Part shown: positions 5,401-37,289 of the stretch, piece by piece
Layout: each line of letters starts with the position of its first letter
Numbering within the stretch: position 1 is the stretch's first letter
Origin: Ranitomeya imitator
Taxonomy: Eukaryota
DNA: 64,000 nt
NCBI RefSeq assembly: GCF_032444005.1
Contig: NC_091291.1
Location: 80,538,001-80,602,000, forward strand
Direction: 5' to 3'
The notes under the pieces: model-generated
Told to the model about the DNA's origin: nothing
Databases searched by the model: none
The model's input: the letters and a program-made list of their open reading frames with translations, nothing else
Translations under genes and position numbers: made by a program

Positions 5401-5413
5401 AATTATAACTGAA

Positions 5414-7762: not shown

Positions 7763-7790
<28 letters not shown>
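7763..7790. repeat. (GT)n microsatellite
   Basis: Direct reading, about 14 repeats. Confidence 0.95.
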
Positions 7791-7794
<4 letters not shown>

Positions 7795-9482: not shown

Positions 9483-9659
9483 TTATCGGGGCTTTACCAT
9501 GTTGAACAGCTCAAACACCACATGCAGCTACGAGGAAAGAAAAAAGCAAAAATAAGTGATGTTTAGAAGATAAAAATGAAAACGCAAAGCAAACACCCCA
9601 GAATGAACTGCTGTCAGTGGCCTGCGGTACCGCACAGTAATGTGAGGGCATTTCTACAG

Positions 9660-11586: not shown

Positions 11587-13098
11587 TGACCTGTGTAACT
11601 GCAGGACATGGCGATTGTGGAGAATTACCGTAAATGGCGCCCAATATTTTTTTCTTCCTTTTTTAAAGCCTTGTTTTAATTGTTGGACACTGGATCATCA
11701 TTTTTAAGAATATGAAGAGCAAGGAGAATATTTTTCTACTCATTGAGAAGGTCCATGGGCCTGTGAAGCTGTGAAAGGACATTGGTGTGTGACGACCCGC
11801 GATGTTGTCACCTGATCATTCCACCTGTTTTGTAACAAATGTTGGATGTGACGACTTTCACGTTTAGTTTTGTAGTTTTCCGTGCGTTGTCCGGTCATTT
11901 CACACAGTACGACGTTCAGCAATGTTGCTGTATTACGTGCCATTATTTCTCTAGGATTAAACCTGCTGTTAAGGACCAGTTTCTTACCATGTTTGTTTAA
12001 CCCTTGAAACAGATATTTCATTCCTTAAAGATGTTGTCCCATGCGCAGGATCCTTACTGTCTCATTACTGGGTCACAGCGGCTGGGATCTCTACTGATCA
12101 TGTGAACAAAGTCTCCTGTGTGATCTTGTAATGGAGCAGTGGTCACACACTCTGGATTGCTCGTTCTTAGAGGGGTGGTTGGAAGGCAATATAATTTCCT
12201 CCTAACTGCTTATCTATTTGATGCTATACTCTATTTTCTAATATGTTTGCTTTAAAAATTCCCTACTGCTCCCTGACTACACGGTAACAGCTGGTGTATT
12301 TCTTCTTCCTATTTCATGTGTGATGATATTGTTTGAGAATCACCAGTGCATGCTGGGATACTCAGGGAAGTGTCATCAGTAGGGTTGAGCAAAACGGATC
12401 GTTCATTTTCAAAAGTCCCCGACTTTTGGCAAAGTCGGGTTTCATGAAACCCGGACCCAATCCCTGTGTGGGGTCGGCCATGCGGTACGCGACTTTCGCG
12501 CCAAAGTCGCGTTTCGTATGACGTGCTTGGCGCCATTTTTTCAGCCAATGAAGGAGCGTGGGCAGAGTGATGACATAGGTCTTAGGGGCGTGGACGCCTA
12601 TCGTCATCTTGTCGCTTATGCACTGTAGCGATTTGAAATGTGTAACACCAGCTTTTCTGTTCGGGGACGGAGAGAGAGAGAGAGACACACAGAGCGCCCA
12701 CAGCCTACTCATCGAATCCGGGCGGCACCGACAGAACTACAAGCCCCGAGAGACCTGTGCAGAACACAGCAATATATGGTTAAAAGACACAGTGCCCCTA
12801 TTATAATCACAATTTGAACTCATACAATAGTATAATAATTTAAAAAATACTCTGTAAAAAGGGTGCGCTGTGCAGATTTCAGTGAATGAACCACTGATGT
12901 AAAGGGGTCAGAACACCTAACCACCACGAGATAGGAAATCACCAGGAAGTCATACAGCATATAGGATTAATAGTATGCCTTTATTTAAATGAAGTGGCAA
13001 TTTATACAAATAATAAAATGGATATTTTCATAAAAAGATTTTTGATAAAAACAAACAAAACGCAGGAACAATGCTATATGGTGCCCAAGACTACCTCA

Positions 13099-13135
<37 letters not shown>

Positions 13136-13194
13136 CACTTTATATGGGCATATAAACAACTCCTCCAGGATATATAATACCACTACTCACTGTG

Positions 13195-13252
<58 letters not shown>

Positions 13253-13888
13253 GTAAAAAAATATATATATGTGAAAAAATAAAAAATTTTTAAACTAAAA
13301 AGTCACATATGACCTATAAAAATGTGAATTGTTATGTGTGTGAAAACTCTAAAATGTTGAAATTTATGAAAAAACGACAGATTAGATACAATAAAAAAAT
13401 TGTGCATATAGAAATCTTTTATATAAAAGTAAAAAATAAAATAAGGTGCCAATAGTGATGTAAATACAATGACACAGCGAGGTATATTATCAGAATGGGA
13501 GAGTTGAAATAGCACCCTATATTCGAACGTGCCCTTATACAAATGACCATAAACAAGTACTCTCTATCAAAACATGCCCCAGTACATATAATTAAAAAGT
13601 AATACGCCCACAGCGAGATATAACCTTACATGAGGATTACTGCAACCACTCACTGTGAGATATGTGTACCACATATAGAGATTATAGCAGCATGCTTATA
13701 AAAGTGCCCAGGTGCTAATATAGCGTGCTCACACAGCAGAGTAGGATACTAAATGTCTGCTTACTGCATAAAGGAGTGCCCCACTATAGCCAGTTATTAT
13801 AGATAGATATCCATATGGGCAAATAATTGTAGCAGAGTGACATGTGGCAATACCTGAGAGATGAGGCTGGGTCCGGGACCTGCGTGCG

Positions 13889-13926
13889 CCCGACGCGCGT
13901 TTCGGAAATATTACCTTCGTCAGGGG
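13889..13926 (-). ncRNA. Minimal type-I hammerhead ribozyme, inverted copy
   Basis: Exact reverse complement of 24977-25014. Confidence 0.8.
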
Positions 13927-14988
13927 GTAGTGAGTGGAGATCCCAGAGGGGTATTTATAGGACTTTCACCGAGCGCTGCGTCCCGGGTACGTGCGGCGCA
14001 TGCGCAGTCTGGAGGTCGGCAACTTCCGGTCCCCGCATCACATGGTCTGTCAGCACAGGAGCGGAGTACCTGGCATGACATAGCAACCATGGATGCAGAG
14101 CGCCGGGACTCACCGACACGGGCCGGGCATGCGCACTACCAGGAGCGCAGTGTGGGAGAAGCGGTCCCAGACTGTAAGAGACAGGATAATACAAAATTGG
14201 GGAAATAAATATATAAATCTAACATAATACTTGGGGCTATCTTCTCCTTATGCCGGATAAGAGGGACATAGTTATATGGTGCTGCAGCAGTTTATATATA
14301 ATTCACTGCACCGTATAAATCCCAACAAATGTCATGTGCAATGTACGCCTTTGCTGGATGGATATGTGTAGTATAATAGCAATAATATATTACTCTGCTG
14401 TACCATATGTCCATGCATTACTACATCAAATCCGGTGTATTGCATGTACCTGTTCCAGCGTATAAAAACGTCATGTGTGCCATAATTGTAAGCACATGAT
14501 GACAAAAACACTGTGCCAAGCATATATGCGATTATACAAGATTATGTGAACCATAAAGGTAACAATATTATACTAAAATCATGTATAAATAGATCACCCA
14601 TAGCCATATGCCCAGTGATATAACACGGATATATACATAGCAATATAGAATACAGTTGTGCACCAGAGCAATACACCTTCTACAGATATTATGTGTTCTT
14701 ATTTTCTTCCTTCTTTGACTGTCATACAGATGATTGTAGGTTCCACCAGTGCATCAAGCCCTGCAGTCAAATCGTCCGACACACAAGCAAGAAAGCTCCA
14801 CATAGAATCCCAATCCATCAGTGGTAAGTGTATAGAAGCTACAAATATAAACGTAAAAATTAGGGATCGTAACATCACAGTTAAAAGAATAAAAATATAT
14901 TTTTTTAAAAGAATTTATTGAGGAAAAAATTTTTTTGTATCCATTAAAACACTTAAGAAAATAAAGTCTAAAAAGGTTTACAGGTAGG

Positions 14989-17900
14989 TTATAAAAAAGA
15001 AGCGAAACTGAGATTTTCGTTCAATCCTTTCGGTGACACCGTCCCTAAGGTCCATATCCATTTTGTTTCTTTTCTGGCTAAAGCTGTACTTATTTCACCC
15101 CCTCTCTCATTTATTTGAATCATGTCTATGCCGGTTACTCTCAACAAGGAGGCATCACAACCATGGTGCAATTTAAAATGTTTGGGAATCGTTTTTAAGG
15201 ACGAAATCTCCTCCACTTCTTTGGCAGCTAAAATTCCCAAAACATGCTCCCTGGTGCGTACTTTGAGTTGTCTAGTTGTCATCCCTATATACACCAGGGA
15301 GCATGGGCACGTGGCATGATAAATGACGGCTTTTGAGGTACAGGTGATGGTCTGTTTGATTTTATACAAAATAGTGCCATTATGATTACAAAAACTACTA
15401 GTTCTATTAATGTTGGTGCAAGCTACACATTGTCCACATGGCTTGCATCCCGGTATGGTTTTCGTATTTGTAAGAAAGGATTGTATTTCTGATTTGTAGG
15501 GATAATGACTTCTGACAAGTTGGTCCTTTAGATTTTTGGATCTGCGATATGTAATATTACATGTTTCCCCGATATATTGTGTTAAAAATCGGGTCAGTTT
15601 TTAAAATGGCCCAAGATTTGTTAATATATGTCCTCATTAACTCGGTTTGGCCATGGTATTGGGTGATATATCTCACTACCTTGTTGTTTTTCTGGGGTCT
15701 TGTCCCGTACAAAGCTTGATGTCTAGTTGTATGTTTAGCACGGTTATACCCCTTTTTCACTGACCGCTTGCTATATCCTCTTTCCAAGAACCTTTCTTTA
15801 AGGTCCATAGCCTGATTCTCAAAGTCTACTTCATTTGTACAGATTCTCCTTAGACGTAAAAATTGTCCTATTGGTATTGAATTAACCCCTTAGTGACCGA
15901 GCCAAATTTTTGAAATCTGACCAGTGTCACTTTATGTGGTAATAACTCTGCAACGCTTCAACAAATCCCAGTGATTTTGAGATTGTTTTTTCGTGACACA
16001 TTCTACTTTATGATAATGGTAAATTTAGTTCAACATTTTTTGTGTTTATTTATAAAAAAAATCAAAAATTTGAGAAAAATGTTAAAAAATTAGCAATTTT
16101 CTAAATTTGAATGATTATCCCTTTAATCCATATAGTCATACAACAGCAAACCATTAATAAATAACATTTCCCACATGTCTGCTTTACATCAGGACCATTT
16201 GTAAAATGTTATTTTATTTTGTTAGCATTTTAGGAGGTTTAAAAACGTAGCAGCAATTTTTCATTTTTTCAAAGAAATTTACAAAATTTATTTTTTTAGG
16301 GACTTATCCATGTTTGAAGTGACTTTAGGGGTCCCATATATTGGGAAACCCCCAAACGTGATACCATTTTAAAAACAGCACCCCTAAACATATTGAAAAC
16401 TGCTGTCAGGTAGTTTATTAACCCTTCAGGTGCTTTACAGGAATTAATGCAAAGTGGTATGACAGAAATTAAAATGTGTATTTTTACCACCTAAATATTG
16501 CTAACTTCTAAACAGATTACTACAGCCGTCAGACTCTAAGGCCGCTATATGGTCATGAATTGCCATGGCAAACATCAGGACCGCAAAATCATGATCTGAG
16601 GGCACCAATTGGGATAAAGAGGAAGCCCCCACGCTCTGTTAACCATTTATAATGATGTAGTCACTATTGACAGCAGCATCTAAGGGGTTAAACAGATTTA
16701 GAAGGTGCAAATACTGATCGTGGCTGGTGCAGCAAGTTGTCAGCTATAGTGTACAGCCGACAGATGATGGATTGGCATCTGTATGGGGATACTATTCTCT
16801 TATATCTAAGGTCAGTTAAAAGACGTATTGGCGGTCATTAAGGGGTTAATCATGGTTGGAGGGTGCGATGAAGAAGCATGTAGTAGTGCGTTCACCGCCG
16901 TAGATTTGCGAAAGATATTGGTATATAGGCAACCACTCTCATCCCTATATACACCCACATCCAAAAATTCCATAAAATCCGTGTCACATTTGTATGTTAA
17001 CCGGATATTTAGCTGATTCTGGTTCAGATGTTCCATAAAGTTATGTAGTGAGTCCTTAGTACCCTGCCAGACAAAAAATATGTCATCAATGAACCGCACC
17101 CATATCGGGATGCGGTCCATTGACGACTCAAGTCCGGCATGAAATAAGTCCCTCTCCCACAGCCCCAGGAACAGATTAGCATAAGATGGCGCAAAAGATG
17201 CGCCCATTGCTGTTCCCTGGAGCTGTAGGTAGAGGGACCCCTTAAAAAGAAAAAAATTTTTTGAAAGTGAAAATTCAAGTATTTGGACTATAAATTGTCT
17301 CATGGATGTGGGTATAACTGAGGAGTTTAAAAAATATTCCGTCGCCCGAACCCCATCGCTGTGGCGGATGTTCGTGTACAGACTCTCAACATCACAAGAC
17401 ACTAAAAGTGTGTCCTCTCCAATAAACAGGCCATCAATTTTTTTCAAAAATTCATTTGTCTTTTATAAAGGATGGTAAGCTCTCGACTAGGGGTTGTAAT
17501 TTTGAGTCAATGAATTTGTTAATTTTCTCCAAGTAATTCCCACATCCCGATATGATGGGTCTGCCAGGCGGTGTTTCTTGATTTTTATGGACCTTTGGTA
17601 ATAAATAAAAGGTCGGTACGGTTGGTTCAGGTACTTGAAGGGCTGTATATAGCTCCTTTGAAATGACCCCTATTTCCATGGCATCTTTTAATATCATCAA
17701 GAGTTCTGTTTTAAATTTCCCCAGGGGGTTGAATGTCAGTTTTTTATAGTAAATATCATCCCTCAACTGGCGAAATACCTCGGATTCATACATCTGCCTA
17801 GGCCAGATCACGATGTTACCCCCCTTGTCAGCCGGTTTTATTACCACATCATTTAATTGATCCAAATTTTTTAGAGCTAATTTCTCTTTTTTATTTAAAT

Positions 17901-19016
17901 TTTCAGCACAAGGAAAGCGTGGAATTTTATCAAATTCTCTGCTGACAGTTTTAACAAAGGTGTCAATGATGGGACAGGCTGACAAAGGGGGAACCTACGA
18001 GATCTCGGCCTAATGGATGAAGGGATCTTACCTCCCAATGGCTCGTTGTGCTCTTGGGCCAATTCCTCCAGGGTCTCTAGTGCCTCTTGCTCCGCCTCTG
18101 TGGGGAACAATTTGAATAGTTCTTCATTATGAAAGTGTTTTTTAAACATTAGTTTCCTGGCAAACAAATGTAGATCTTTGATAGCTATAAACTTATCAAA
18201 CTGTGCCGTGGGACAAAACGTAAGACCTTTTTTAAGAACATTAATTTCAGATTCAGTTAAAACATGATTACTCAAGTTAATCACCTTTAAATTATTATCA
18301 GCATTTGGTCGATAATTCCGTTTAGCCGGTGTATATCGAGGTTCACGTTTACGTTTTGGTGTAGACGCCATTGAGGCCAGAGTAGAGACAGAGGCGGATG
18401 AGGAGGCACCAGAGACATTCACCGGGGCAAGATTGGATGTTGTGGAATCAAAGCGGTCGCGTGTATTACCATCTTGTTGCTGCTTCCGCCACCTGTAAAT
18501 TTTTCCACTAGAGAAATCTCTTTGATCCCTTATTAATTTACTTTTCTGGGTGGTTTGGATATCTTTAATCCATTGGTCCATCTGTTTTTCAAGTAAACCA
18601 TCCATAGATGATAATTGTTCAGCTGATAAACAGTTCTTTGCTTTCACATATACTTCATCCAATAATTTATCAATATTGCTTATATTTTGGGAGTTATATT
18701 GAACCAACAATTCCATCAACTGCTTAGACGCAGTATTGCACACTCCTTCCCAGCTTTTTATAAAGCCCTCATCAGTAACAGGAAAAGCAGGCGTGACATG
18801 TATCCTTAATCCCCTAGGGATGAGTTGGTGTTGAATATAATTCTCTAGAAAAGCCTTACTCCACCAGGCCCTAGTTCTCTTGTACGTCAGATTTTTAATA
18901 TTTTTAAAAAGATCATCAAATTGCAAACCGTCTGTAACCACGATGTTCGTATTGCCATTTGAAAATACGGCATTGATCTGTCCCTGCCATGACAACTCTC
19001 TGGCTTTGAAATCCAT
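14989..19016 (-). pseudogene. Penelope/Neptune RT-GIY-YIG ORF, inverted copy, disrupted
   Basis: Same protein as the + copies. Private frameshifts: -1 at ~17992 and -2 at ~17459. Shared lesions: the MITE at 15886-16845 and the extra A at 15584-15588. Confidence 0.9.
15886..16845. mobile_element. 960-bp piggyBac-like MITE in the inverted Penelope copy
   Basis: TTAA at 15882-15885 and 16846-16849. TIR CCCCTTA(G/A)TGACC. Confidence 0.9.
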
Positions 19017-19472
19017 ATCCAGATGAAAAGGAAAAAGACCTGTGCAGAACACAGCAATATATGGTTAAAAGACACAGTGCCCCTATTATAATCACAATTT
19101 GAACTCATACAATAGTATAATAATTTAAAAAATACTCTATAAAAAGGGTGCGCTGTGCAGATTTCAGTGAATGAACCACTGATGTAAAGGGGTCAGAACA
19201 CCTAACCACCACGAGATAGGAAATCACCAGGAAGTCATACAGCATATAGGATTAATAGTATGCCTTTATTTAAATGAAGTGGCAATTTATACAAATAATA
19301 AAATGGATATTTTCATAAAAAGATTTTTGATAAAAACAAACAAAACGCAGGAACAATGCTATATGGTGCCCAAGACTACCTCAAAAATATATATATATAT
19401 ATATGTATCACTTTATATGGGCATATAAACAACTCCTCCAGGATATATAATACCACTACTCACTGTGTCATG

Positions 19473-19474
<2 letters not shown>

Positions 19475-19552
<78 letters not shown>
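19475..19552. repeat. (TA)n microsatellite in the Penelope non-coding region (also 13197-13247, 25666-25730, 31964-31988)
   Basis: About 39 repeats here, and about 25, 32 and 12 in the other copies. Confidence 0.95.
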
Positions 19553-19558
<6 letters not shown>

Positions 19559-19883
19559 GTAAAAAAATATATATATGTGAAAAAATAAAAAATCCATTTT
19601 ATTATTTGTATAAATTGCCACTTCATTTAAATAAAGGCATACTATTAATCCTATATGCTGTATGACTTCCTGGTGATTTCCTATCTCGTGGTGGTTAGGT
19701 GTTCTGACCCCTTTACATCAGTGGTTCATTCACTGAAATCTGCACAGCGCACCCTTTTTATAGAGTATTTTTTAAATTATTATACTATTGTATGAGTTCA
19801 AATTGTGATTATAATAGGGGCACTGTGTCTTTTAACCATATATTGCTGTGTTCTGCACAGGTCTTTTTCCTTTTCATCTGGAT

Positions 19884-22800
19884 ATGGATTTCAAAGCCAG
19901 AGAGTTGTCATGGCAGGGACAGATCAATGCCGTATTTTCAAATGGCAATACGAACATCGTGGTTACAGACGGTTTGCAATTTGATGATCTTTTTAAAAAT
20001 ATTAAAAATCTGACGTACAAGAGAACTAGGGCCTGGTGGAGTAAGGCTTTTCTAGAGAATTATATTCAACACCAACTCATCCCTAGGGGATTAAGGATAC
20101 ATGTCACGCCTGCTTTTCCTGTTACTGATGAGGGCTTTATAAAAAGCTGGGAAGGAGTGTGCAATACTGCGTCTAAGCAGTTGATGGAATTGTTGGTTCA
20201 ATATAACTCCCAAAATATAAGCAATATTGATAAATTATTGGATGAAGTATATGTGAAAGCAAAGAACTGTTTATCAGCTGAACAATTATCATCTATGGAT
20301 GGTTTACTTGAAAAACAGATGGACCAATGGATTAAAGATATCCAAACCACCCAGAAAAGTAAATTAATAAGGGATCAAAGAGATTTCTCTAGTGGAAAAA
20401 TTTACAGGTGGCGGAAGCAGCAACAAGATGGTAATACACGCGACCGCTTTGATTCCACAACATCCGATCTTGCCCCGGTGAATGTCTCTGGTGCCTCCTC
20501 ATCCGCCTCTGTCTCTACTCTGGCCTCAATGGCGTCTACACCAAAACGTAAACGTGAACCTCGATATACACCGGCTAAACGGAATTATCGACCAAATGCT
20601 GATAATAATTTAAAGGTGATTAACTTGAGTAATCATGTTTTAACTGAATCTGAAATTAATGTTCTTAAAAAAGGTCTTACGTTTTGTCCCACGGCACAGT
20701 TTGATAAGTTTATAGCTATCAAAGATCTACATTTGTTTGCCAGGAAACTAATGTTTAAAAAACACTTTCATAATGAAGAACTATTCAAATTGTTCCCCAC
20801 AGAGGCGGAGCAAGAGGCACTAGAGACCCTGGAGGAATTGGCCCAAGAGCACAACGAGCCATTGGGAGGTAAGATCCCTTCATCCATTAGGCCGAGATCT
20901 CGTAGGTTTCCCCCTTTGTCAGCCTGTCCCATCATTGACACCTTTGTTAAAACTGTCAGCAGAGAATTTGATAAAATTCCACGCTTTCCTTGTGCTGAAA
21001 ATTTAAATAAAAAAGAGAAATTAGCTCTAAAAAATTTGGATCAATTAAATGATGTGGTAATAAAACCGGCTGACAAGGGGGGTAACATCGTGATCTGGCC
21101 TAGGCAGATGTATGAATCCGAGGTATTTCGCCAGTTGAGGGATGATATTTACTATAAAAAACTGACATTCAACCCCCTGGGGAAATTTAAAACAGAACTC
21201 TTGATGATATTAAAAGATGCCATGGAAATAGGGGTCATTTCAAAGGAGCTATATACAGCCCTTCAAGTACCTGAACCAACCGTACCGACCTTTTATTTAT
21301 TACCAAAGGTCCATAAAAATCAAGAAACACCGCCTGGCAGACCCATCATATCGGGATGTGGGAATTACTTGGAGAAAATTAACAAATTCATTGACTCAAA
21401 ATTACAACCCCTAGTCGAGAGCTTACCATCCTTTATAAAAGACACAAATGAATTTTTGAAAAAAATTGATGGCCTGTTTATTGGAGAGGACACACTTTTA
21501 GTGTCTTGTGATGTTGAGAGTCTGTACACGAACATCCGCCACAGCGATGGGGTTCGGGCGACGGAATATTTTTTAAACTCCTCAGTTATACCCACATCCA
21601 TGAGACAATTTATAGTCCAAATACTTGAATTTTCACTTTCAAAAAATTTTTTTCTTTTTAAGGGGTCCCTCTACCTACAGCTCCAGGGAACAGCAATGGG
21701 CGCATCTTTTGCGCCATCTTATGCTAATCTGTTCCTGGGGCTGTGGGAGAGGGACTTATTTCATGCCGGACTTGAGTCGTCAATGGACCGCATCCCGATA
21801 TGGGTGCGGTTCATTGATGACATATTTTTTGTCTGGCAGGGTACTAAGGACTCACTACATAACTTTATGGAACATCTGAACCAGAATCAGCTAAATATCC
21901 GGTTAACATACAAATGTGACACGGATTTTATGGAATTTTTGGATGTGGGTGTATATAGGGATGAGAGTGGTTGCCTATATACCAATATCTTTCGCAAATC
22001 TACGGCGGTGAACGCACTACTACATGCTTCTTCATCGCACCCTCCAACCATGATTAACCCCTTAATGACCGCCAATACGTCTTTTAACTGACCTTAGATA
22101 TAAGAGAATAGTATCCCCATACAGATGCCAATCCATCATCTGTCGGCTGTACACTATAGCTGACAACTTGCTGCACCAGCCACGATCAGTATTTGCACCT
22201 TCTAAATCTGTTTAACCCCTTAGATGCTGCTGTCAATAGTGACTACATCATTATAAATGGTTAACAGAGCGTGGGGGCTTCCTCTTTATCCCAATTGGTG
22301 CCCTCAGATCATGATTTTGCGGTCCTGATGTTTGCCATGGCAATTCATGACCATATAGCGGCCTTAGAGTCTGACGGCTGTAGTAATCTGTTTAGAAGTT
22401 AGCAATATTTAGGTGGTAAAAATACACATTTTAATTTCTGTCATACCACTTTGCATTAATTCCTGTAAAGCACCTGAAGGGTTAATAAACTACCTGACAG
22501 CAGTTTTCAATATGTTTAGGGGTGCTGTTTTTAAAATGGTATCACGTTTGGGGGTTTCCCAATATATGGGACCCCTAAAGTCACTTCAAACATGGATAAG
22601 TCCCTAAAAAAATAAATTTTGTAAATTTCTTTGAAAAAATGAAAAATTGCTGCTACGTTTTTAAACCTCCTAAAATGCTAACAAAATAAAATAACATTTT
22701 ACAAATGGTCCTGATGTAAAGCAGACATGTGGGAAATGTTATTTATTAATGGTTTGCTGTTGTATGACTATATGGATTAAAGGGATAATCATTCAAATTT

Positions 22801-23914
22801 AGAAAATTGCTAATTTTTTAACATTTTTCTCAAATTTTTGATTTTTTTTATAAATAAACACAAAAAATGTTGAACTAAATTTACCATTATCATAAAGTAG
22901 AATGTGTCACGAAAAAACAATCTCAAAATCACTGGGATTTGTTGAAGCGTTGCAGAGTTATTACCACATAAAGTGACACTGGTCAGATTTCAAAAATTTG
23001 GCTCGGTCACTAAGGGGTTAATTCAATACCAATAGGACAATTTTTACGTCTAAGGAGAATCTGTACAAATGAAGTAGACTTTGAGAATCAGGCTATGGAC
23101 CTTAAAGAAAGGTTCTTGGAAAGAGGATATAGCAAGCGGTCAGTGAAAAAGGGGTATAACCGTGCTAAACATACAACTAGACATCAAGCTTTGTACGGGA
23201 CAAGACCCCAGAAAAACAACAAGGTAGTGAGATATATCACCCAATACCATGGCCAAACCGAGTTAATGAGGACATATATTAACAAATCTTGGGCCATTTT
23301 AAAAACTGACCCGATTTTTAACACAATATATCGGGGAAACATGTAATATTACATATCGCAGATCCAAAAATCTAAAGGACCAACTTGTCAGAAGTCATTA
23401 TCCCTACAAATCAGAAATACAATCCTTTCTTACAAATACGAAAACCATACCGGGATGCAAGCCATGTGGACAATGTGTAGCTTGCACCAACATTAATAGA
23501 ACTAGTAGTTTTTGTAATCATAATGGCACTATTTTGTATAAAATCAAACAGACCATCACCTGTACCTCAAAAGCCGTCATTTATCATGCCACGTGCCCAT
23601 GCTCCCTGGTGTATATAGGGATGACAACTAGACAACTCAAAGTACGCACCAGGGAGCATGTTTTGGGAATTTTAGCTGCCAAAGAAGTGGAGGAGATTTC
23701 GTCCTTAAAAACGATTCCCAAACATTTTAAATTGCACCATGGTTGTGATGCCTCCTTGTTGAGAGTAACCGGCATAGACATGATTCAAATAAATGAGAGA
23801 GGGGGTGAAATAAGTACAGCTTTAGCCAGAAAAGAAACAAAATGGATATGGACCTTAGGGACGGTGTCACCGAAAGGATTGAACGAAAATCTCAGTTTCG
23901 CTTCTTTTTTATAA
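19884..23914 (+). pseudogene. Penelope/Neptune-type RT + Cys linker + GIY-YIG endonuclease ORF, copy 1 (reconstructs to 1021 aa)
   Basis: Starts MDFKARE. RT motifs LLPKVHK..PGRPIISG, CDVESLYTNI, QGTAMGASFAP, RFIDDIF, FLDV. Then SIPIGQFLRLRRIC, CKPCGQCVAC, VIY..YIGMT..RTREH, KETKWI and PKGLNE. Broken by a MITE at 22058-23017 and an extra T at 23315-23319. The RT-side ORF 19884-22091 is open. Confidence 0.93.
22058..23017. mobile_element. 960-bp piggyBac-like MITE in Penelope copy 1
   Basis: TTAA at 22054-22057 and 23018-23021. Ends CCCCTTAATGACC...GGTCACTAAGGGG. Removing it restores ATG ATT AAT TCA ATA CCA (M-I-N-S-I-P) in frame. Confidence 0.92.
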
Positions 23915-24767
23915 CCTACCTGTAAACCTTTTTAGACTTTATTTTCTTAAGTGTTTTAATGGATACAAAAAAATTTTTTCCTCAATAAATTCTTTTAAAA
24001 AAATATATTTTTATTCTTTTAACTGTGATGTTACGATCCCTAATTTTTACGTTTATATTTGTAGCTTCTATACACTTACCACTGATGGATTGGGATTCTA
24101 TGTGGAGCTTTCTTGCTTGTGTGTCGGACGATTTGACTGCAGGGCTTGATGCACTGGTGGAACCTACAATCATCTGTATGACAGTCAAAGAAGGAAGAAA
24201 ATAAGAACACATAATATCTGTAGAAGGTGTATTGCTCTGGTGCACAACTGTATTCTATATTGCTATGTATATATCCGTGTTATATCACTGGGCATATGGC
24301 TATGGGTGATCTATTTATACATGATTTTAGTATAATATTGTTACCTTTATGGTTCACATAATCTTGTATAATCGCATATATGCTTGGCACAGTGTTTTTG
24401 TCATCATGTGCTTACAATTATGGCACACATGACGTTTTTATACGCTGGAACAGGTACATGCAATACACCGGATTTGATGTAGTAATGCATGGACATATGG
24501 TACAGCAGAGTAATATATTATTGCTATTATACTACACATATCCATCCAGCAAAGGCGTACATTGCACATGACATTTGTTGGGATTTATACGGTGCAGTGA
24601 ATTATATATAAACTGCTGCAGCACCATATAACTATGTCCCTCTTATCCGGCATAAGGAGAAGATAGCCCCAAGTATTATGTTAGATTTATATATTTATTT
24701 CCCCAATTTTGTATTATCCTGTCTCTTACAGTCTGGGACCGCTTCTCCCACACTGCGCTCCTGGTAG

Positions 24768-24976
24768 TGCGCATGCCCGGCCCGTGTCGGTGAGTCCCGG
24801 CGCTCTGCATCCATGGTTGCTATGTCACGCCAGGTACTCCGCTCCTGTGCTGACAGACCATGTGATGCGGGGACCGGAAGTTGCCGACCTCCAGACTGCG
24901 CATGCGCCGCACGTACCCGGGACGCAGCGCTCGGTGAAAGTCCTATAAATACCCCTCTGGGATCTCCACTCACTAC
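24768..24976 (+). promoter_or_regulatory. Putative Penelope pLTR Pol II promoter (other copies at 31068-31276 + and 13927-14135 -)
   Basis: ACCGGAAGT (ETS) at 24873-24881, TGCGCATGCGC (NRF1) at 24897-24907, TATAAATA at 24944-24951. Inr-like TCACT has its A at 24972, 28 nt after the first T of the TATA box. Confidence 0.65.
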
Positions 24977-25014
24977 CCCCTGACGAAGGTAATATTTCCG
25001 AAACGCGCGTCGGG
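24977..25014 (+). ncRNA. Minimal type-I hammerhead ribozyme
   Basis: Helix I CCC/GGG; CUGACGA at 24980-24986; extra A; short helix II GG..CC; GAAAC at 25000-25004; palindromic helix III (ACGCGCGU); GUC cleavage triplet at 25009-25011. Hammerheads are known in Penelope pLTRs. Confidence 0.8.
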
Positions 25015-25650
25015 CGCACGCAGGTCCCGGACCCAGCCTCATCTCTCAGGTATTGCCACATGTCACTCTGCTACAATTATTTGCCCATATGGATATCTAT
25101 CTATAATAACTGGCTATAGTGGGGCACTCCTTTATGCAGTAAGCAGACATTTAGTATCCTACTCTGCTGTGTGAGCACGCTATATTAGCACCTGGGCACT
25201 TTTATAAGCATGCTGCTATAATCTCTATATGTGGTACACATATCTCACAGTGAGTGGTTGCAGTAATCCTCATGTAAGGTTATATCTCGCTGTGGGCGTA
25301 TTACTTTTTAATTATATGTACTGGGGCATGTTTTGATAGAGAGTACTTGTTTATGGTCATTTGTATAAGGGCACGTTCGAATATAGGGTGCTATTTCAAC
25401 TCTCCCATTCTGATAATATACCTCGCTGTGTCATTGTATTTACATCACTATTGGCACCTTATTTTATTTTTTACTTTTATATAAAAGATTTCTATATGCA
25501 CAATTTTTTTATTGTATCTAATCTGTCGTTTTTTCATAAATTTCAACATTTTAGAGTTTTCACACACATAACAATTCACATTTTTATAGGTCATATGTGA
25601 CTTTTTAGTTTAAAAATTTTTTATTTTTTCACATATATATATTTTTTTAC

Positions 25651-25732
<82 letters not shown>

Positions 25733-26183
25733 CACAGTGAGTAGTGGTATTATATATCCTGGAGGAGTTGTTTATATGCCCATATAAAGTGATACATATA
25801 TATATATATATATTTTTGAGGTAGTCTTGGGCACCATATAGCATTGTTCCTGCGTTTTGTTTGTTTTTATCAAAAATCTTTTTATGAAAATATCCATTTT
25901 ATTATTTGTATAAATTGCCACTTCATTTAAATAAAGGCATACTATTAATCCTATATGCTGTATGACTTCCTGGTGATTTCCTATCTCGTGGTGGTTAGGT
26001 GTTCTGACCCCTTTACATCAGTGGTTCATTCACTGAAATCTGCACAGCGCACCCTTTTTATAGAGTATTTTTTAAATTATTATACTATTGTATGAGTTCA
26101 AATTGTGATTATAATAGGGGCACTGTGTCTTTTAACCATATATTGCTGTGTTCTGCACAGGTCTTTTTCCTTTTCATCTGGAT

Positions 26184-29100
26184 ATGGATTTCAAAGCCAG
26201 AGAGTTGTCATGGCAGGGACAGATCAATGCCGTATTTTCAAATGGCAATACGAACATCGTGGTTACAGACGGTTTGCAATTTGATGATCTTTTTAAAAAT
26301 ATTAAAAATCTGACGTACAAGAGAACTAGGGCCTGGTGGAGTAAGGCTTTTCTAGAGAATTATATTCAACACCAACTCATCCCTAGGGGATTAAGGATAC
26401 ATGTCACGCCTGCTTTTCCTGTTACTGATGAGGGCTTTATAAAAAGCTGGGAAGGAGTGTGCAATACTGCGTCTAAGCAGTTGATGGAATTGTTGGTTCA
26501 ATATAACTCCCAAAATATAAGCAATATTGATAAATTATTGGATGAAGTATATGTGAAAGCAAAGAACTGTTTATCAGCTGAACAATTATCATCTATGGAT
26601 GGTTTACTTGAAAAACAGATGGACCAATGGATTAAAGATATCCAAACCACCCAGAAAAGTAAATTAATAAGGGATCAAAGAGATTTCTCTAGTGGAAAAA
26701 TTTACAGGTGGCGGAAGCAGCAACAAGATGGTAATACACGCGACCGCTTTGATTCCACAACATCCGATCTTGCCCCGGTGAATGTCTCTGGTGCCTCCTC
26801 ATCCGCCTCTGTCTCTACTCTGGCCTCAATGGCGTCTACACCAAAACGTAAACGTGAACCTCGATATACACCGGCTAAACGGAATTATCGACCAAATGCT
26901 GATAATAATTTAAAGGTGATTAACTTGAGTAATCATGTTTTAACTGAATCTGAAATTAATGTTCTTAAAAAAGGTCTTACGTTTTGTCCCACGGCACAGT
27001 TTGATAAGTTTATAGCTATCAAAGATCTACATTTGTTTGCCAGGAAACTAATGTTTAAAAAACACTTTCATAATGAAGAACTATTCAAATTGTTCCCCAC
27101 AGAGGCGGAGCAAGAGGCACTAGAGACCCTGGAGGAATTGGCCCAAGAGCACAACGAGCCATTGGGAGGTAAGATCCCTTCATCCATTAGGCCGAGATCT
27201 CGTAGGTTTCCCCCTTTGTCAGCCTGTCCCATCATTGACACCTTTGTTAAAACTGTCAGCAGAGAATTTGATAAAATTCCACGCTTTCCTTGTGCTGAAA
27301 ATTTAAATAAAAAAGAGAAATTAGCTCTAAAAAATTTGGATCAATTAAATGATGTGGTAATAAAACCGGCTGACAAGGGGGGTAACATCGTGATCTGGCC
27401 TAGGCAGATGTATGAATCCGAGGTATTTCGCCAGTTGAGGGATGATATTTACTATAAAAAACTGACATTCAACCCCCTGGGGAAATTTAAAACAGAACTC
27501 TTGATGATATTAAAAGATGCCATGGAAATAGGGGTCATTTCAAAGGAGCTATATACAGCCCTTCAAGTACCTGAACCAACCGTACCGACCTTTTATTTAT
27601 TACCAAAGGTCCATAAAAATCAAGAAACACCGCCTGGCAGACCCATCATATCGGGATGTGGGAATTACTTGGAGAAAATTAACAAATTCATTGACTCAAA
27701 ATTACAACCCCTAGTCGAGAGCTTACCATCCTTTATAAAAGACACAAATGAATTTTTGAAAAAAATTGATGGCCTGTTTATTGGAGAGGACACACTTTTA
27801 GTGTCTTGTGATGTTGAGAGTCTGTACACGAACATCCGCCACAGCGATGGGGTTCGGGCGACGGAATATTTTTTAAACTCCTCAGTTATACCCACATCCA
27901 TGAGACAATTTATAGTCCAAATACTTGAATTTTCACTTTCAAAAAATTTTTTTCTTTTTAAGGGGTCCCTCTACCTACAGCTCCAGGGAACAGCAATGGG
28001 CGCATCTTTTGCGCCATCTTATGCTAATCTGTTCCTGGGGCTGTGGGAGAGGGACTTATTTCATGCCGGACTTGAGTCGTCAATGGACCGCATCCCGATA
28101 TGGGTGCGGTTCATTGATGACATATTTTTTGTCTGGCAGGGTACTAAGGACTCACTACATAACTTTATGGAACATCTGAACCAGAATCAGCTAAATATCC
28201 GGTTAACATACAAATGTGACACGGATTTTATGGAATTTTTGGATGTGGGTGTATATAGGGATGAGAGTGGTTGCCTATATACCAATATCTTTCGCAAATC
28301 TACGGCGGTGAACGCACTACTACATGCTTCTTCATCGCACCCTCCAACCATGATTAACCCCTTAATGACCGCCAATACGTCTTTTAACTGACCTTAGATA
28401 TAAGAGAATAGTATCCCCATACAGATGCCAATCCATCATCTGTCGGCTGTACACTATAGCTGACAACTTGCTGCACCAGCCACGATCAGTATTTGCACCT
28501 TCTAAATCTGTTTAACCCCTTAGATGCTGCTGTCAATAGTGACTACATCATTATAAATGGTTAACAGAGCGTGGGGGCTTCCTCTTTATCCCAATTGGTG
28601 CCCTCAGATCATGATTTTGCGGTCCTGATGTTTGCCATGGCAATTCATGACCATATAGCGGCCTTAGAGTCTGACGGCTGTAGTAATCTGTTTAGAAGTT
28701 AGCAATATTTAGGTGGTAAAAATACACATTTTAATTTCTGTCATACCACTTTGCATTAATTCCTGTAAAGCACCTGAAGGGTTAATAAACTACCTGACAG
28801 CAGTTTTCAATATGTTTAGGGGTGCTGTTTTTAAAATGGTATCACGTTTGGGGGTTTCCCAATATATGGGACCCCTAAAGTCACTTCAAACATGGATAAG
28901 TCCCTAAAAAAATAAATTTTGTAAATTTCTTTGAAAAAATGAAAAATTGCTGCTACGTTTTTAAACCTCCTAAAATGCTAACAAAATAAAATAACATTTT
29001 ACAAATGGTCCTGATGTAAAGCAGACATGTGGGAAATGTTATTTATTAATGGTTTGCTGTTGTATGACTATATGGATTAAAGGGATAATCATTCAAATTT

Positions 29101-30214
29101 AGAAAATTGCTAATTTTTTAACATTTTTCTCAAATTTTTGATTTTTTTTATAAATAAACACAAAAAATGTTGAACTAAATTTACCATTATCATAAAGTAG
29201 AATGTGTCACGAAAAAACAATCTCAAAATCACTGGGATTTGTTGAAGCGTTGCAGAGTTATTACCACATAAAGTGACACTGGTCAGATTTCAAAAATTTG
29301 GCTCGGTCACTAAGGGGTTAATTCAATACCAATAGGACAATTTTTACGTCTAAGGAGAATCTGTACAAATGAAGTAGACTTTGAGAATCAGGCTATGGAC
29401 CTTAAAGAAAGGTTCTTGGAAAGAGGATATAGCAAGCGGTCAGTGAAAAAGGGGTATAACCGTGCTAAACATACAACTAGACATCAAGCTTTGTACGGGA
29501 CAAGACCCCAGAAAAACAACAAGGTAGTGAGATATATCACCCAATACCATGGCCAAACCGAGTTAATGAGGACATATATTAACAAATCTTGGGCCATTTT
29601 AAAAACTGACCCGATTTTTAACACAATATATCGGGGAAACATGTAATATTACATATCGCAGATCCAAAAATCTAAAGGACCAACTTGTCAGAAGTCATTA
29701 TCCCTACAAATCAGAAATACAATCCTTTCTTACAAATACGAAAACCATACCGGGATGCAAGCCATGTGGACAATGTGTAGCTTGCACCAACATTAATAGA
29801 ACTAGTAGTTTTTGTAATCATAATGGCACTATTTTGTATAAAATCAAACAGACCATCACCTGTACCTCAAAAGCCGTCATTTATCATGCCACGTGCCCAT
29901 GCTCCCTGGTGTATATAGGGATGACAACTAGACAACTCAAAGTACGCACCAGGGAGCATGTTTTGGGAATTTTAGCTGCCAAAGAAGTGGAGGAGATTTC
30001 GTCCTTAAAAACGATTCCCAAACATTTTAAATTGCACCATGGTTGTGATGCCTCCTTGTTGAGAGTAACCGGCATAGACATGATTCAAATAAATGAGAGA
30101 GGGGGTGAAATAAGTACAGCTTTAGCCAGAAAAGAAACAAAATGGATATGGACCTTAGGGACGGTGTCACCGAAAGGATTGAACGAAAATCTCAGTTTCG
30201 CTTCTTTTTTATAA
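26184..30214 (+). pseudogene. Penelope/Neptune-type RT-GIY-YIG ORF, copy 2
   Basis: Translations identical to copy 1, offset by 6300. MITE at 28358-29317; extra T at 29615-29619. Confidence 0.93.
28358..29317. mobile_element. 960-bp piggyBac-like MITE in Penelope copy 2
   Basis: Same sequence and site as 22058-23017, offset by 6300. Confidence 0.92.
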
Positions 30215-31276
30215 CCTACCTGTAAACCTTTTTAGACTTTATTTTCTTAAGTGTTTTAATGGATACAAAAAAATTTTTTCCTCAATAAATTCTTTTAAAA
30301 AAATATATTTTTATTCTTTTAACTGTGATGTTACGATCCCTAATTTTTACGTTTATATTTGTAGCTTCTATACACTTACCACTGATGGATTGGGATTCTA
30401 TGTGGAGCTTTCTTGCTTGTGTGTCGGACGATTTGACTGCAGGGCTTGATGCACTGGTGGAACCTACAATCATCTGTATGACAGTCAAAGAAGGAAGAAA
30501 ATAAGAACACATAATATCTGTAGAAGGTGTATTGCTCTGGTGCACAACTGTATTCTATATTGCTATGTATATATCCGTGTTATATCACTGGGCATATGGC
30601 TATGGGTGATCTATTTATACATGATTTTAGTATAATATTGTTACCTTTATGGTTCACATAATCTTGTATAATCGCATATATGCTTGGCACAGTGTTTTTG
30701 TCATCATGTGCTTACAATTATGGCACACATGACGTTTTTATACGCTGGAACAGGTACATGCAATACACCGGATTTGATGTAGTAATGCATGGACATATGG
30801 TACAGCAGAGTAATATATTATTGCTATTATACTACACATATCCATCCAGCAAAGGCGTACATTGCACATGACATTTGTTGGGATTTATACGGTGCAGTGA
30901 ATTATATATAAACTGCTGCAGCACCATATAACTATGTCCCTCTTATCCGGCATAAGGAGAAGATAGCCCCAAGTATTATGTTAGATTTATATATTTATTT
31001 CCCCAATTTTGTATTATCCTGTCTCTTACAGTCTGGGACCGCTTCTCCCACACTGCGCTCCTGGTAGTGCGCATGCCCGGCCCGTGTCGGTGAGTCCCGG
31101 CGCTCTGCATCCATGGTTGCTATGTCATGCCAGGTACTCCGCTCCTGTGCTGACAGACCATGTGATGCGGGGACCGGAAGTTGCCGACCTCCAGACTGCG
31201 CATGCGCCGCACGTACCCGGGACGCAGCGCTCGGTGAAAGTCCTATAAATACCCCTCTGGGATCTCCACTCACTAC

Positions 31277-31314
31277 CCCCTGACGAAGGTAATATTTCCG
31301 AAACGCGCGTCGGG
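31277..31314 (+). ncRNA. Minimal type-I hammerhead ribozyme, copy 2
   Basis: Identical to 24977-25014. Confidence 0.8.
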
Positions 31315-31958
31315 CGCACGCAGGTCCCGGACCCAGCCTCATCTCTCAGGTATTGCCACATGTCACTCTGCTACAATTATTTGCCCATATGGATATCTAT
31401 CTATAATAACTGGCTATAGTGGGGCACTCCTTTATGCAGTAAGCAGACATTTAGTATCCTACTCTGCTGTGTGAGCACGCTATATTAGCACCTGGGCACT
31501 TTTATAAGCATGCTGCTATAATCTCTATATGTGGTACACATATCTCACAGTGAGTGGTTGCAGTAATCCTCATGTAAGGTTATATCTCGCTGTGGGCGTA
31601 TTACTTTTTAATTATATGTACTGGGGCATGTTTTGATAGAGAGTACTTGTTTATGGTCATTTGTATAATGGCACGTTCGAATATAGGGTGCTATTTCAAC
31701 TCTCCCATTCTGATAATATACCTCGCTGTGTCATTGTATTTACATCACTATTGGCACCTTATTTTATTTTTTACTTTTATATAAAAGATTTCTATATGCA
31801 CAATTTTTTTTATTGTATCTAATCTGTCGTTTTTTCATAAATTTCACCATTTTAGAGTTTTCACACACATAACAATTCACATTTTTATAGGTCATATGTG
31901 ACTTTTTAGTTTAAAAATTTTTTATTTTTTCACATACGGTATATATATTTTTTTACAT

Positions 31959-31989
<31 letters not shown>

Positions 31990-33769
31990 ACACAGTGAGT
32001 AGTGGTATTATATATCCTGGAGGAGTTGTTTATATGCCCATATAAAGTGATACATATATATATATATATATTTGAGGTAGTCTTGGGCACCATATAGCAT
32101 TGTTCCTGCGTTTTGTTTGTTTTTATCAAAAATCTTTTTATGAAAATATCCATTTTATTATTTGTATAAATTGCCACTTCATTTAAATAAAGGCATACTA
32201 TTAATCCTATATGCTGTATGACTTCCTGGTGATTTCCTATCTCGTGGTGGTTAGGTGTTCCAAGCCCCGAGAGAACAGACTCTGCCAGCAGTGCCCCCAG
32301 GAGGCCGTGGAGGATGAGGCTCACTTCCTGCTGAGGTGCCCCAAATACTCCGCAGTGAGGGACACTCACTTCAAGAGGCTGTCTGATCTCCTCCCTGACT
32401 TCACCTCCAAGGAGGAGGAAGAGAAACTGCCAATAATACTGGGGGAAGAGGAAAGTGCAGCAACCGTAGCAGCGGAATATGTCAGTGCCTGCCACAGACT
32501 AAGAGGAGCCTGATATGTCATGGACTCCTATACCCCACCCTGGAAACATCCCCTATCCTCTAAAAGGAATTTGATATTCCCTGGACCTCTATATGCCCCC
32601 TCCCCCACCCCCGTATTTTTACCATATGCTTTGGCAATGCTAACATGTACTTAGTCCTGCCAATAAAGCTCATTTGAATTGAATTGAGAGAGAGAAGAAA
32701 AAAAATAAAATAAATAATCCCATTGACTTTGCATTGGGTTTCGTGTTTCGGTCGATCCCCGACTTTACGCCATAATCGGCCGATTTCACTCGACTCGACT
32801 TTAGAGATAGTCGGGTTTCGCGAAACCTGACTCGACCCTAAAAAAGTAAAAGTCGCTCAACCCTAGTCATCAGAGCTGGAGGCAGAGGCTGCGGTCACTG
32901 TCACAGCCTCTGCCCCCTCTTTGAAATGAAGTGTCATCAGTAACGCTCACTTCAGGGGTGGCGCTGTCCCTGCTGTGTTCCCTGTGCCTTGTCCTCACCC
33001 ATGCAATGTGTACGCCGCCTTGCCCTCCCCATGCGATGTGGGTGGTGCCTTCCCCCCCACCCCCCCGTGCGATGTGGGCGGTGCCTTGTCCCCCCCCTGT
33101 GCGATGTGCACGGCCTCCTCTGTGTGCTTTGTTGACTGCTTAGATGAATAGTAATATGCCGGGAGTGGTGTCACTATACCGGCGGTGCAGGAGGGCAGCT
33201 CATCCCCCACAAGTGACGTCACTGGTTTCTTCTGGGTATAGGGACCCCGCTCTGCTCCTGGCTTATTACTAGTCAGCTGACAACAGAGCGCACATCCCAG
33301 AGGGAGAAAAAGTACATGGGTACACGAGGAACAGCACCACCCCTGAAATGAACATCATTGATGACGCTCAGGTTCAGGCAGGGGCTGTGACAGTGACCGT
33401 AGCTGCTGCTCCCTGCTTAGCCGACGCTTAGTTCGAGAATCTAAGTATGCACTGGGACACTCACACAGGAAATGGGGAAAAATACACCAGCTGTTACCAT
33501 GTAGTCAGGGAGCGGTAGGGCATTTTTAAAGCAAATATATTAGAAAATAGCTTAGATTATAGCATCAGGTAGATAACGAGTTAGGAGGAAAATCGCCTTC
33601 GGATCACCCCTTTAAGATCAGTGGGGGTCCCAGTTGTTGGACCCTTAGCAGTCATATCCCCTGAATGTTTATTGGACACTCCCTCTCATTTCTGCTTTGA
33701 GTTGTTTTCCAAAATCAAATTTGCAAGTGTTGTATGTGGATTTTGCTTCGGATCCAGACACAGATTTAA

Positions 33770-37056: not shown

Positions 37057-37289
37057 TAGTTACTCCCATCATTGCCTTCTCCATCACTACACGCACCTTT
37101 CACCGCGCACCCTCGTAGCAGCCGGCAGCTTCCACTCCCATGGCGCTGAATGGTGTCATCCAGCTGAGCCGCTGACTGCTCACGTCGCTGCAGCTGTGAT
37201 ACGCCACTAATTAAGACCTCTCCGTGTCTCCTGTGCCAGTCAGTGTCAGAGCGAGGAGCAATATCTGCTCCGATCCGACCCAGTCAGCG

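What the first reader, a model, noticed from the sequence alone, without database searches (positions are those of the whole stretch)
12754..32260. One 19.5-kb Penelope insertion event containing more than three genome lengths: 1.09 units inverted plus 2.02 units forward
A single 14-bp TSD encloses everything. Both segments exceed one 6.3-kb unit and start and end at arbitrary phases. The inversion joint has 2-bp microhomology (AT, 19592-19593), and the left end has 3-bp microhomology (AGA) with the target. Partial tandems and short inverted pLTRs are known for Penelope elements, but a complete inverted unit plus a dimer is much larger. Inference: double-ended (twin) priming on a multimeric transcript, or rolling-circle reverse transcription of a hammerhead-processed circular RNA.
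Basis: partly seen in the sequence, partly recalled or inferred. Interest (0 to 1): 0.8.

Follow-up and report, generated by a model that had tools for sequence, protein, structure and literature searches.

The report
Large two-armed Penelope retrotransposon insertion
This is a real, very young 19.5-kb insertion of a frog Penelope-like retrotransposon laid down as two head-to-head arms (1.09 and 2.02 element lengths) inside one 14-bp target duplication; it is an unusually large but otherwise typical example of how this element class inserts, not a new mechanism.

Summary
The coordinates hold. A 14-bp TSD (12740-12753, 32261-32274) encloses an inverted arm (12754-19593, 1.09 units) and a forward arm (19594-32260, 2.02 units), with 2-nt and 3-nt microhomologies as stated.

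The outer ends are not arbitrary. They sit at unit phases 111 and 268-271, the family's two canonical start sites. Ten of ten insertions examined in this genome have one "short" end (phase 108-119) and one "long" end (235-271), head-to-head, and seven others show a 13-16-bp TSD.

Another locus (C8:469) has 0.88 inverted plus 2.13 forward units inside one 14-bp TSD. Published work already describes this architecture and shows that a PLE protein cleaves and extends both strands.

New details:
- All three units carry the same piggyBac-type MITE and a frameshift, so a defective copy was mobilised in trans. No source copy is in the assembly.
- Three polarised sites each group a different pair of units, so sequence was exchanged between units or templates.
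- Two independent family events break exactly at the predicted hammerhead cleavage site.

Multimeric transcript, RNA circle and later unequal crossing-over cannot be separated here. The scan found similar Penelope structures before on other DNA of this genome.

The parts
12740..12753 (.). Left copy of the 14-bp target-site duplication CAAGCCCCGAGAGA. Its last 3 nt (AGA) also match the element.
12754..19593 (-). Inverted arm, 6840 bp = 1.09 units. Its 3' (outer) end is at unit phase 268-271, the 'long' RT start site extended about 22 nt beyond the siblings' end. Its 5' (inner) end is at phase 6023.
19592..19593 (.). Inversion joint. The 2 nt AT can be assigned to either arm.
19594..32260 (+). 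Forward arm, 12667 bp = unit F1 (19594-25893) + unit F2 (25894-32149) + 111 bp. Its 3' (outer) end is at phase 111, the 'short' RT start site.
32261..32274 (.). Right copy of the 14-bp TSD.
19848..22091 (+). Truncated PLE ORF (747 codons, N-terminal domain plus RT) in F1. The same ORF is at 26148-28391 in F2. In the inverted arm it is further broken, at 16812-19052 (-).
22054..23021 (+). Nested piggyBac-type MITE (TTAA duplication, CCCCTTA.TGACCG inverted termini) interrupting the ORF at unit phase 2464|3425. Identical copies lie at 28354-29321 (F2) and 15882-16849 (inverted arm).
23018..23911 (+). Remnant of the C-terminal part of the ORF (thumb/linker and GIY-YIG region), split by a 1-bp insertion at phase 3722 (window 23315). 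All three units share this insertion.
24974..25017 (+). Minimal type-I hammerhead motif: CUGACGA, short helix II, GAAACGCGCGUC. Predicted cleavage is after 25011 (phase 5418|5419). It also occurs at 31274-31317 (F2) and 13886-13929 (-).
25656..25704 (.). (TA)n tract of variable length between units (F1 longest, inverted unit -24 bp, F2 -48 bp). A second short (TA)n tract is near phase 6203-6221.

Best explanation
This is a single retrotransposition of a defective Penelope-like element (PLE) in a frog genome, most likely Ranitomeya imitator.

- Cut: a PLE ribonucleoprotein supplied in trans by an intact sibling made a staggered cut that left two 14-nt 3' overhangs.
- Priming: both 3' ends then primed reverse transcription on element RNA. 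Synthesis started at the family's two canonical internal start sites, the 'short' site (phase 111) for the forward arm and the 'long' site (phase 268-271) for the inverted arm.
- Templates: the templates were longer than one unit, most simply read-through transcripts of a tandem source. The two cDNAs therefore ran 2.02 and 1.09 units.
- Joining: their 3' ends were then joined through 2 nt of microhomology.

Shown: the anatomy, the canonical end positions, the family-wide two-arm rule with one TSD, and the shared MITE and frameshift.

Inferred: the order of events, that the template was a linear multimer, and trans-complementation.
For: - Structure, TSD and microhomologies are confirmed.
- PLE identity rests on RT homologs with GIY-YIG relatives and a sibling with a 1037-codon open frame bearing GIY/YIG/R/H/E/N motifs. 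A hammerhead core is conserved across subfamilies, with compensatory helix II changes.
- Outer ends are canonical. About 25 genomic copies end at phase ~240 and about 10 at 111-119.
- 10 of 10 insertions with both ends mapped are head-to-head, with one long and one short end. Seven other loci have single 13-16-bp TSDs.
- Arms of one unit or more recur. C8:469 has 0.88 + 2.13 units in one 14-bp TSD, and C1:839 has 0.96 + 1.15 units.
- All three units share the MITE and the +T frameshift, so the template already carried them.
- Inter-unit divergence is equal and tiny: 2-4 substitutions per pair.
- Literature: both strands are cleaved and extended, RT starts at two adjacent internal sites, and a multi-copy mRNA is proposed as template (PMC11167929). 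The tandem + inverted + one-sided tail architecture is described (PMC8557442, PMC3846280), as is trans-mobilisation through pLTRs alone (PMC3846280).
Against: - No source copy carrying the MITE junction exists elsewhere in the assembly. A linear template for the forward arm would need a transcript of at least 12.7 kb from a tandem MITE-bearing source.
- The hammerhead would have had to stay uncleaved at all three passages.
- Three polarised sites (873, 5235, 5953) each unite a different pair of units. Identical-at-birth units with only private mutations cannot give this pattern. It needs mosaic or switched templates, or later gene conversion, and the latter also makes later unequal crossing-over conceivable.
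- F2-specific changes cluster in phase 5776-6221.
- The assembly could not be checked with reads.
- The target is GC-rich, unlike the AT-rich preference reported for other PLEs.
Confidence: 0.58

Rival explanations
1. The same double-ended target-primed insertion took place, but the extra unit lengths arose on hammerhead-processed monomer RNA. Either the RT went round a ligated 6.3-kb RNA circle more than once, or it jumped seamlessly from the cleaved 5' end of one monomer to the 3' end of another.
For: - The hammerhead core is strongly conserved, with compensatory helix II changes, and gives an Rfam Hammerhead_1 hit.
- Two independent family events break exactly at the predicted cleavage site. 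One is the sibling deletion 4395|5419. The other is the inner end of the C3:402 arm, which starts GGGCGCACGC. Cleaved RNA is therefore used as template, and the RT can jump from that end.
- A circle or a monomer needs only a source of about 1 unit.
- All F2-distinct changes lie in the 882-nt segment between the cleavage site and the unit end (P about 6e-5). That would fit if this segment came from a separate template molecule.
- Circular RNAs and rolling-circle ideas exist for PLE-derived retrozymes (bioRxiv 10.64898/2026.07.22.740005).
Against: - There is no direct evidence for a circle.
- Neither arm end lies at the cleavage site. All three passages across it are seamless, and serial end-to-end jumps rarely achieve that.
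- In vitro, hammerhead cleavage is dispensable, and no RNA-seq ends were seen at the site in Anolis (PMC11167929).
- A single circular template predicts units identical at birth, which the three doubleton sites contradict unless gene conversion followed.
- The helix II cluster could equally reflect instability next to (TA)n.
Confidence: 0.18
2. The original insertion was a simpler two-armed PLE, about 1.09 inverted plus 1.02 forward units. The second forward unit was added later by unequal sister-chromatid or homologue exchange between the direct repeats, with gene conversion keeping the units alike.
For: - Doubleton sites grouping all three possible pairs show that sequence has moved between units.
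- At C8:469 the two forward units are five times more alike (99.88%) than either is to the inverted arm (99.49%). That is as expected for a later duplication or for frequent conversion between direct repeats.
Against: - A 1.02-unit arm would offer only 111 bp of direct terminal homology.
- F1-F2 divergence (4 substitutions plus 2 indels) is not lower than I-F divergence (2-4 substitutions).
- Multi-unit arms made at insertion are documented for PLEs (PMC8557442). Earlier scan notes also report them in this genome (s1-288107, not re-tested here).
Confidence: 0.16
3. This is an assembly artefact. One forward unit was falsely duplicated, or the inverted arm was mis-joined, in a near-identical repeat.
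For: - The units are more than 99.8% identical, and such repeats are hard to assemble.
- The public runs available are short contigs. None bridges the joint or a whole unit.
Against: - There are no Ns in the window.
- F1, F2 and I carry distinct substitutions, a 5-bp insertion and different (TA)n lengths.
- The ends are canonical and enclosed by a perfect TSD.
- The same architecture recurs at independent loci.
Confidence: 0.06

Closest known systems
Canonical EN+ Penelope-like element insertion architecture (Penelope/Poseidon/Neptune; Craig et al. 2021, PMC8557442; Arkhipova et al. 2013, PMC3846280)
   Same: - RT plus C-terminal GIY-YIG ORF.
- Hammerhead in the non-coding repeat.
- Partial tandems forming pseudo-LTRs.
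- An inverted 5'-truncated copy upstream.
- An extra 'tail' at one end only.
- One TSD around the whole structure.
   Different: - Scale: the inverted arm exceeds a full unit and the forward arm is a full dimer (3.1 units, 19.5 kb).
- The tail is about 125-157 nt, against the 30-40 nt reported.
- The TSD is 13-16 bp, against 8-10 bp in the rotifer.
- The target here is GC-rich.
- The mobilised copy is defective and carries a nested DNA transposon.
PAc (Anolis Poseidon) in vitro system (Frangieh et al. 2024, PMC11167929)
   Same: - Both DNA strands serve as primers.
- RT starts at two adjacent internal RNA sites close to the ORF start.
- Multi-copy transcripts are proposed as template.
   Different: - The start sites here lie 20-180 nt upstream of the first ATG, not 111-118 nt inside the ORF.
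- In every genomic insertion examined, the two arms use different sites. In vitro, no strand difference was seen.
- Genomic breakpoints at the hammerhead cleavage site exist here. In Anolis, no RNA ends were seen at that site.
L1 twin priming
   Same: The second target 3' end primes on RNA and gives an inverted 5' segment joined by microhomology inside one TSD.
   Different: - In L1 the inverted piece is the part of the same RNA immediately upstream of the forward piece, and it starts at a random internal site.
- Here both arms start at fixed sites and copy overlapping content.
- Here two-armed products are the rule, not the exception.
Non-LTR retrozymes and hammerhead circRNAs (Cervera and de la Pena 2020, as cited in bioRxiv 10.64898/2026.07.22.740005)
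   Same: Tandem units that each carry a type-I hammerhead, mobilised by PLE machinery. Circular or rolling-circle intermediates are hypothesised for them.
   Different: Retrozyme units are a few hundred nt long and non-coding. This unit is 6.3 kb and is a disrupted autonomous element. No circle evidence exists for it.

Membership tests
EN+ Penelope-like elements (C-terminal GIY-YIG) | PLE-type reverse transcriptase | tested here: met
   The 747-aa ORF matches frog PLE proteins at E down to 6e-239 (about 50% identity). These carry PF00078/PF28514/PF26215, and several carry PF01541. The direct RVT_1 hit is weak: 25.9 bits, below the cut-off.
EN+ Penelope-like elements (C-terminal GIY-YIG) | GIY-YIG endonuclease domain fused C-terminally | tested here: met
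   The sibling copy L041:3071-6178(-) reads through in one frame. It aligns with PF01541-annotated relatives and shows VIY...YIG, R/H and E...N motifs. Pfam itself gave no hit on this protein. In the window the region is present but frameshifted and separated from the RT by the MITE.
EN+ Penelope-like elements (C-terminal GIY-YIG) | Hammerhead ribozyme motif in the repeat (pLTR) region | tested here: met
   Rfam Hammerhead_1 gives 23.2 bits, below the gathering score of 34 (E = 9e-4 in a 141-nt search). It was missed in the 21-kb scan. The core is invariant across subfamilies, helix II shows compensatory changes, and two genomic breaks lie exactly at the cleavage site. Catalysis was not tested.
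EN+ Penelope-like elements (C-terminal GIY-YIG) | Partial-tandem (pLTR) plus inverted 5'-truncated copy inside one TSD, with a tail at one end | tested here: met
   Seen in the window and in 9 other loci. The tail is 124-157 nt.
EN+ Penelope-like elements (C-terminal GIY-YIG) | Preference for AT-rich or microsatellite targets (a tendency, not a strict criterion) | tested here: not met
   The target here is CAAGCCCCGAGAGA. Other family TSDs are mixed, for example TTACTATAATGAG and AGACGCCCTAGTGT.
L1-type twin priming on one RNA | The inverted segment is the RNA part contiguous with, and upstream of, the forward segment, and is primed at a non-specific internal site | tested here: not met
   Both arms start at canonical sites and copy the same unit content. 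A single-RNA reading would need a transcript of about 19 kb spanning four units.
Non-LTR retrozyme | Short non-coding unit with a hammerhead in every repeat | tested here: not met
   The unit is 6.3 kb and contains RT/EN coding remnants.
Rolling-circle reverse transcription of circular RNA | A circular template exists, and the units are identical at birth | not testable with these tools
   No RNA reads could be laid. The doubleton sites argue against strict identity at birth unless gene conversion followed.

The most novel reading that the evidence does not exclude
The 2.02- and 1.09-unit arms were not copied from a long read-through transcript. They were made by the PLE RT running repeatedly over hammerhead-processed unit-length RNA, either a ligated circle or serial end-to-end template jumps.

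If so, the two breakpoints lying exactly at the cleavage site in sibling copies would be the first genomic footprints showing that the hammerhead takes part in the replication cycle of autonomous-size PLEs.
Probability: 0.18. Interest if true: 0.7.

Novelty: new member of a known kind. Interest (0 to 1): 0.3.

Why it matters
As a structure it is a clean, large and very young specimen of the known PLE insertion style. It does not change the picture. Its value lies in what the family comparison adds to an open mechanistic problem:

- In vivo, the two arms of an insertion always use different RT start sites (10 of 10).
- A copy disrupted by a DNA transposon can still be mobilised as a product of more than 3 units.
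- Some cDNAs end or jump exactly at the hammerhead cleavage site. That bears on the unsettled role of the ribozyme in PLE replication.

These points are testable in the published in vitro system and with long-read RNA data.

Tried and rejected
- **Read support.** The only runs holding the sequence are short Logan contigs. None bridges the joint or a unit, and the unit-specific variants were not reported. Nothing can be concluded about unit number. The contigs do contain the sibling 1023-bp deletion form.
- **Paralogous empty site.** The left flank is a high-copy repeat that ends about 60 bp before the target, so no empty-site paralogue exists.
- **Rfam on the whole region** found no hammerhead. 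Only a short-stretch search did.
- **Pfam** found no GIY-YIG in the window fragments or in the sibling ORF. The domain was recognised only by alignment to annotated relatives.
- **MFE folding** of the hammerhead region as a monomer is not better than shuffles. This is expected for minimal PLE hammerheads and was not used as evidence.
- **Source copy.** Searches for the left and right MITE junctions and for the F2-specific variant set found only the window itself.
- **'Trailing RT on one RNA' model.** The idea was that the long-site arm can never outrun the short-site arm. C1:411 (5261 bp against 985 bp) rejects it.
- **Star phylogeny or a simple duplication tree for the three units.** The three conflicting doubleton sites reject both.
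- **Common transcription start for the inner ends.** Inner ends of other arms of one unit or more (5086, 5578, 6023, 1) do not coincide. This is unresolved.
Full report
**Observation.** A self-comparison of the window shows three near-identical copies of a unit of about 6.3 kb. Two are direct (period 6300) and one is inverted.

- The TSD CAAGCCCCGAGAGA lies at 12740-12753 and 32261-32274.
- In phase coordinates (phase 1 = 19594), the forward arm is 6300 + 6256 + 111 bp.
- The inverted arm is 287 + 6285 + 268 bp. That gives 2.02 and 1.09 units, 3.11 in total.
- The joint has 2 nt (AT) of microhomology, the left end has 3 nt (AGA), and the right end has none.
- The window contains no Ns.

**What the unit is.**
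- The 747-codon ORF (19848-22091) matches frog proteins with PLE-type RT domains. Some of these carry GIY-YIG.
- Contig lengths of the genome equal those listed for Ranitomeya imitator proteins, so the host is most likely that frog.
- The ORF is cut short by a 968-bp element with TTAA duplications and CCC...GGG inverted termini. This is a piggyBac-type MITE, present at about 99% identity at many loci.
- Downstream, the C-terminal part is present but frameshifted by a 1-bp insertion.
- A near-identical sibling on C1 (L041) lacks the MITE and the frameshift. It reads through 1037 codons and has GIY-YIG motifs aligned to PF01541-annotated relatives.
- A minimal type-I hammerhead lies at 24974-25017, with predicted cleavage after 25011. 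Its core is invariant across subfamilies whose flanks are only 70-90% identical, and helix II changes are compensatory.

**The ends are not arbitrary.**
- Genome-wide, about 25 copies end at phase ~240 and about 10 at phase 111-119.
- Mapping 13 loci onto the unit shows one recurring anatomy: two head-to-head arms with their 3' ends outward.
- In all ten insertions with both ends mapped, one arm ends at the 'long' site (235-271) and the other at the 'short' site (108-119). The chance probability is about 0.001.
- Seven other loci have single TSDs of 13-16 bp around both arms.
- The window follows the rule: 268-271 on the inverted arm, 111 on the forward arm, and a 14-bp TSD.
- This matches the published 'tail at one end' (PMC8557442, PMC3846280). 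It also matches the in vitro finding that a PLE protein cleaves and extends both strands and starts RT at two adjacent internal sites (PMC11167929). The tail here is longer, at 124-157 nt.

**Is the size exceptional?** It is not qualitatively exceptional.
- C8:469 has a 0.88-unit inverted arm plus a 2.13-unit forward arm (unit 5077 bp) inside one 14-bp TSD, about 3.0 units in total.
- C1:839 has 0.96 + 1.15 units.
- In one hit list, at least seven loci show (-,+) pairs in which both arms exceed about 2.8 kb.
- Earlier notes of this scan describe an 11.5-kb head-to-head dimer and a ten-copy fold-back multimer elsewhere in this genome (I did not re-test them).
- The literature states that two or more ORFs in tandem plus an inverted copy is the typical arrangement.

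**What is specific to this copy.**
- All three units share the MITE and the frameshift with no differences. The template was therefore already defective and must have been mobilised in trans. This fits pLTR-only trans-mobilisation in rotifers (PMC3846280).
- Neither MITE junction occurs anywhere else in the assembly. The source is missing, whether lost, unassembled or on the other haplotype.

**History of the units.** Only 5 substitutions and 4 small indels distinguish the units, apart from (TA)n length. I polarised the variable sites against individual outgroup copies.

| Site (phase) | Units with the derived base | Unit with the ancestral base |
|---|---|---|
| 873 | F1 and F2 | I |
| 5235 | F2 and I | F1 |
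| 5953 | F1 and I | F2 |

- Each pair of units shares one derived state. This rejects both a star (identical at birth, private mutations only) and a simple duplication tree.
- Either the templates were mosaic or switched, or gene conversion has acted at the locus.
- F2's own changes (T5776, +T5910, +TACGG at 6040, T6112, shortest TA tract) all lie in phase 5776-6221, next to the (TA)n tracts. They fall within the segment between the hammerhead site and the unit end.

**Hammerhead footprints.**
- The two C1:828 siblings share a 1023-bp deletion whose right edge is exactly the predicted cleavage site (AATAA|GGGCGCACGC).
- Independently, the inner end of one arm at C3:402 begins with the same first nucleotide.
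- The deletion form is also present in public contigs.
- This indicates that cleaved RNA serves as template, and that the RT can jump from that 5' end.

**Verdict.** The finding is real. It is a large, young and typical two-armed PLE insertion of a trans-mobilised defective copy.
- Double-ended priming is well supported and already published.
- Linear multimer (favoured), circle or jumps, and later unequal crossing-over cannot be separated with the data at hand.
- The assembly could not be verified with reads.

Noticed in passing
L041:2990|2991 (also L042, L001, L019, L020) and L052 about 2654: Two independent events break exactly at the predicted hammerhead cleavage site (GUC|GGGCGCACGC). One is a 1023-bp deletion (phase 4396-5418) shared by the two youngest siblings, which removes the ribozyme core. 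The other is the inner end of an arm at C3:402. They look like footprints of cleaved template RNA and of template jumping.
   Followed up: partly
window 12754 and 32260; loci L043-L054: In 10 of 10 insertions the two arms use different RT start sites, one 'long' (phase 235-271) and one 'short' (108-119). The resulting one-sided tail is 124-157 nt, much longer than the 30-40 nt reported for other PLEs.
   Followed up: partly
window 22054-23021 (also 28354-29321 and 15882-16849): A 968-bp piggyBac-type MITE (TTAA, CCCCTTA.TGACCG termini) has over 1000 candidate loci at about 99% identity in this genome, so the family has been active very recently.
   Followed up: partly
window phases 873, 5235, 5953 (for example 20466, 24828, 25546 in F1): Three sites where two of the three units share a derived base, each site grouping a different pair. 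This is a signature of gene conversion between the arms or of mosaic templates.
   Followed up: yes
window 31669-32071: All changes private to forward unit 2 (2 substitutions, +T, +TACGG, the shortest TA tracts, plus a retained ancestral base) cluster in about 450 bp next to the (TA)n tracts. The cause is unknown.
   Followed up: partly
L041:3071-6178 (-): The closest sibling keeps one uninterrupted 1036-1037-codon RT-EN frame but lacks the hammerhead core entirely. A second insertion (L042) carries the same deletion, so this lineage appears to have transposed without the ribozyme.
   Followed up: partly
window 12404-12694: The left flank belongs to another high-copy repeat (about 2700 candidate loci, 95-98% identity) that ends about 60 bp before the insertion site.
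   Followed up: no
window 36193-38473, 42361-45526, 46509-51376, 53302-54000: Long minisatellite arrays: 30-bp units in two related blocks (37293-40284 is 91% identical to 50168-53188), a GT-rich 17-23-bp array with strong GC skew, and a 42-bp array.
   Followed up: no
L044+L045 (C1:1077683500-1077702000), joined positions 5300-11406: A 16-bp-TSD two-armed PLE insertion has a segment of about 6.1 kb, bounded by 973-bp direct repeats (LTR-like), sitting at its inversion joint.
   Followed up: no
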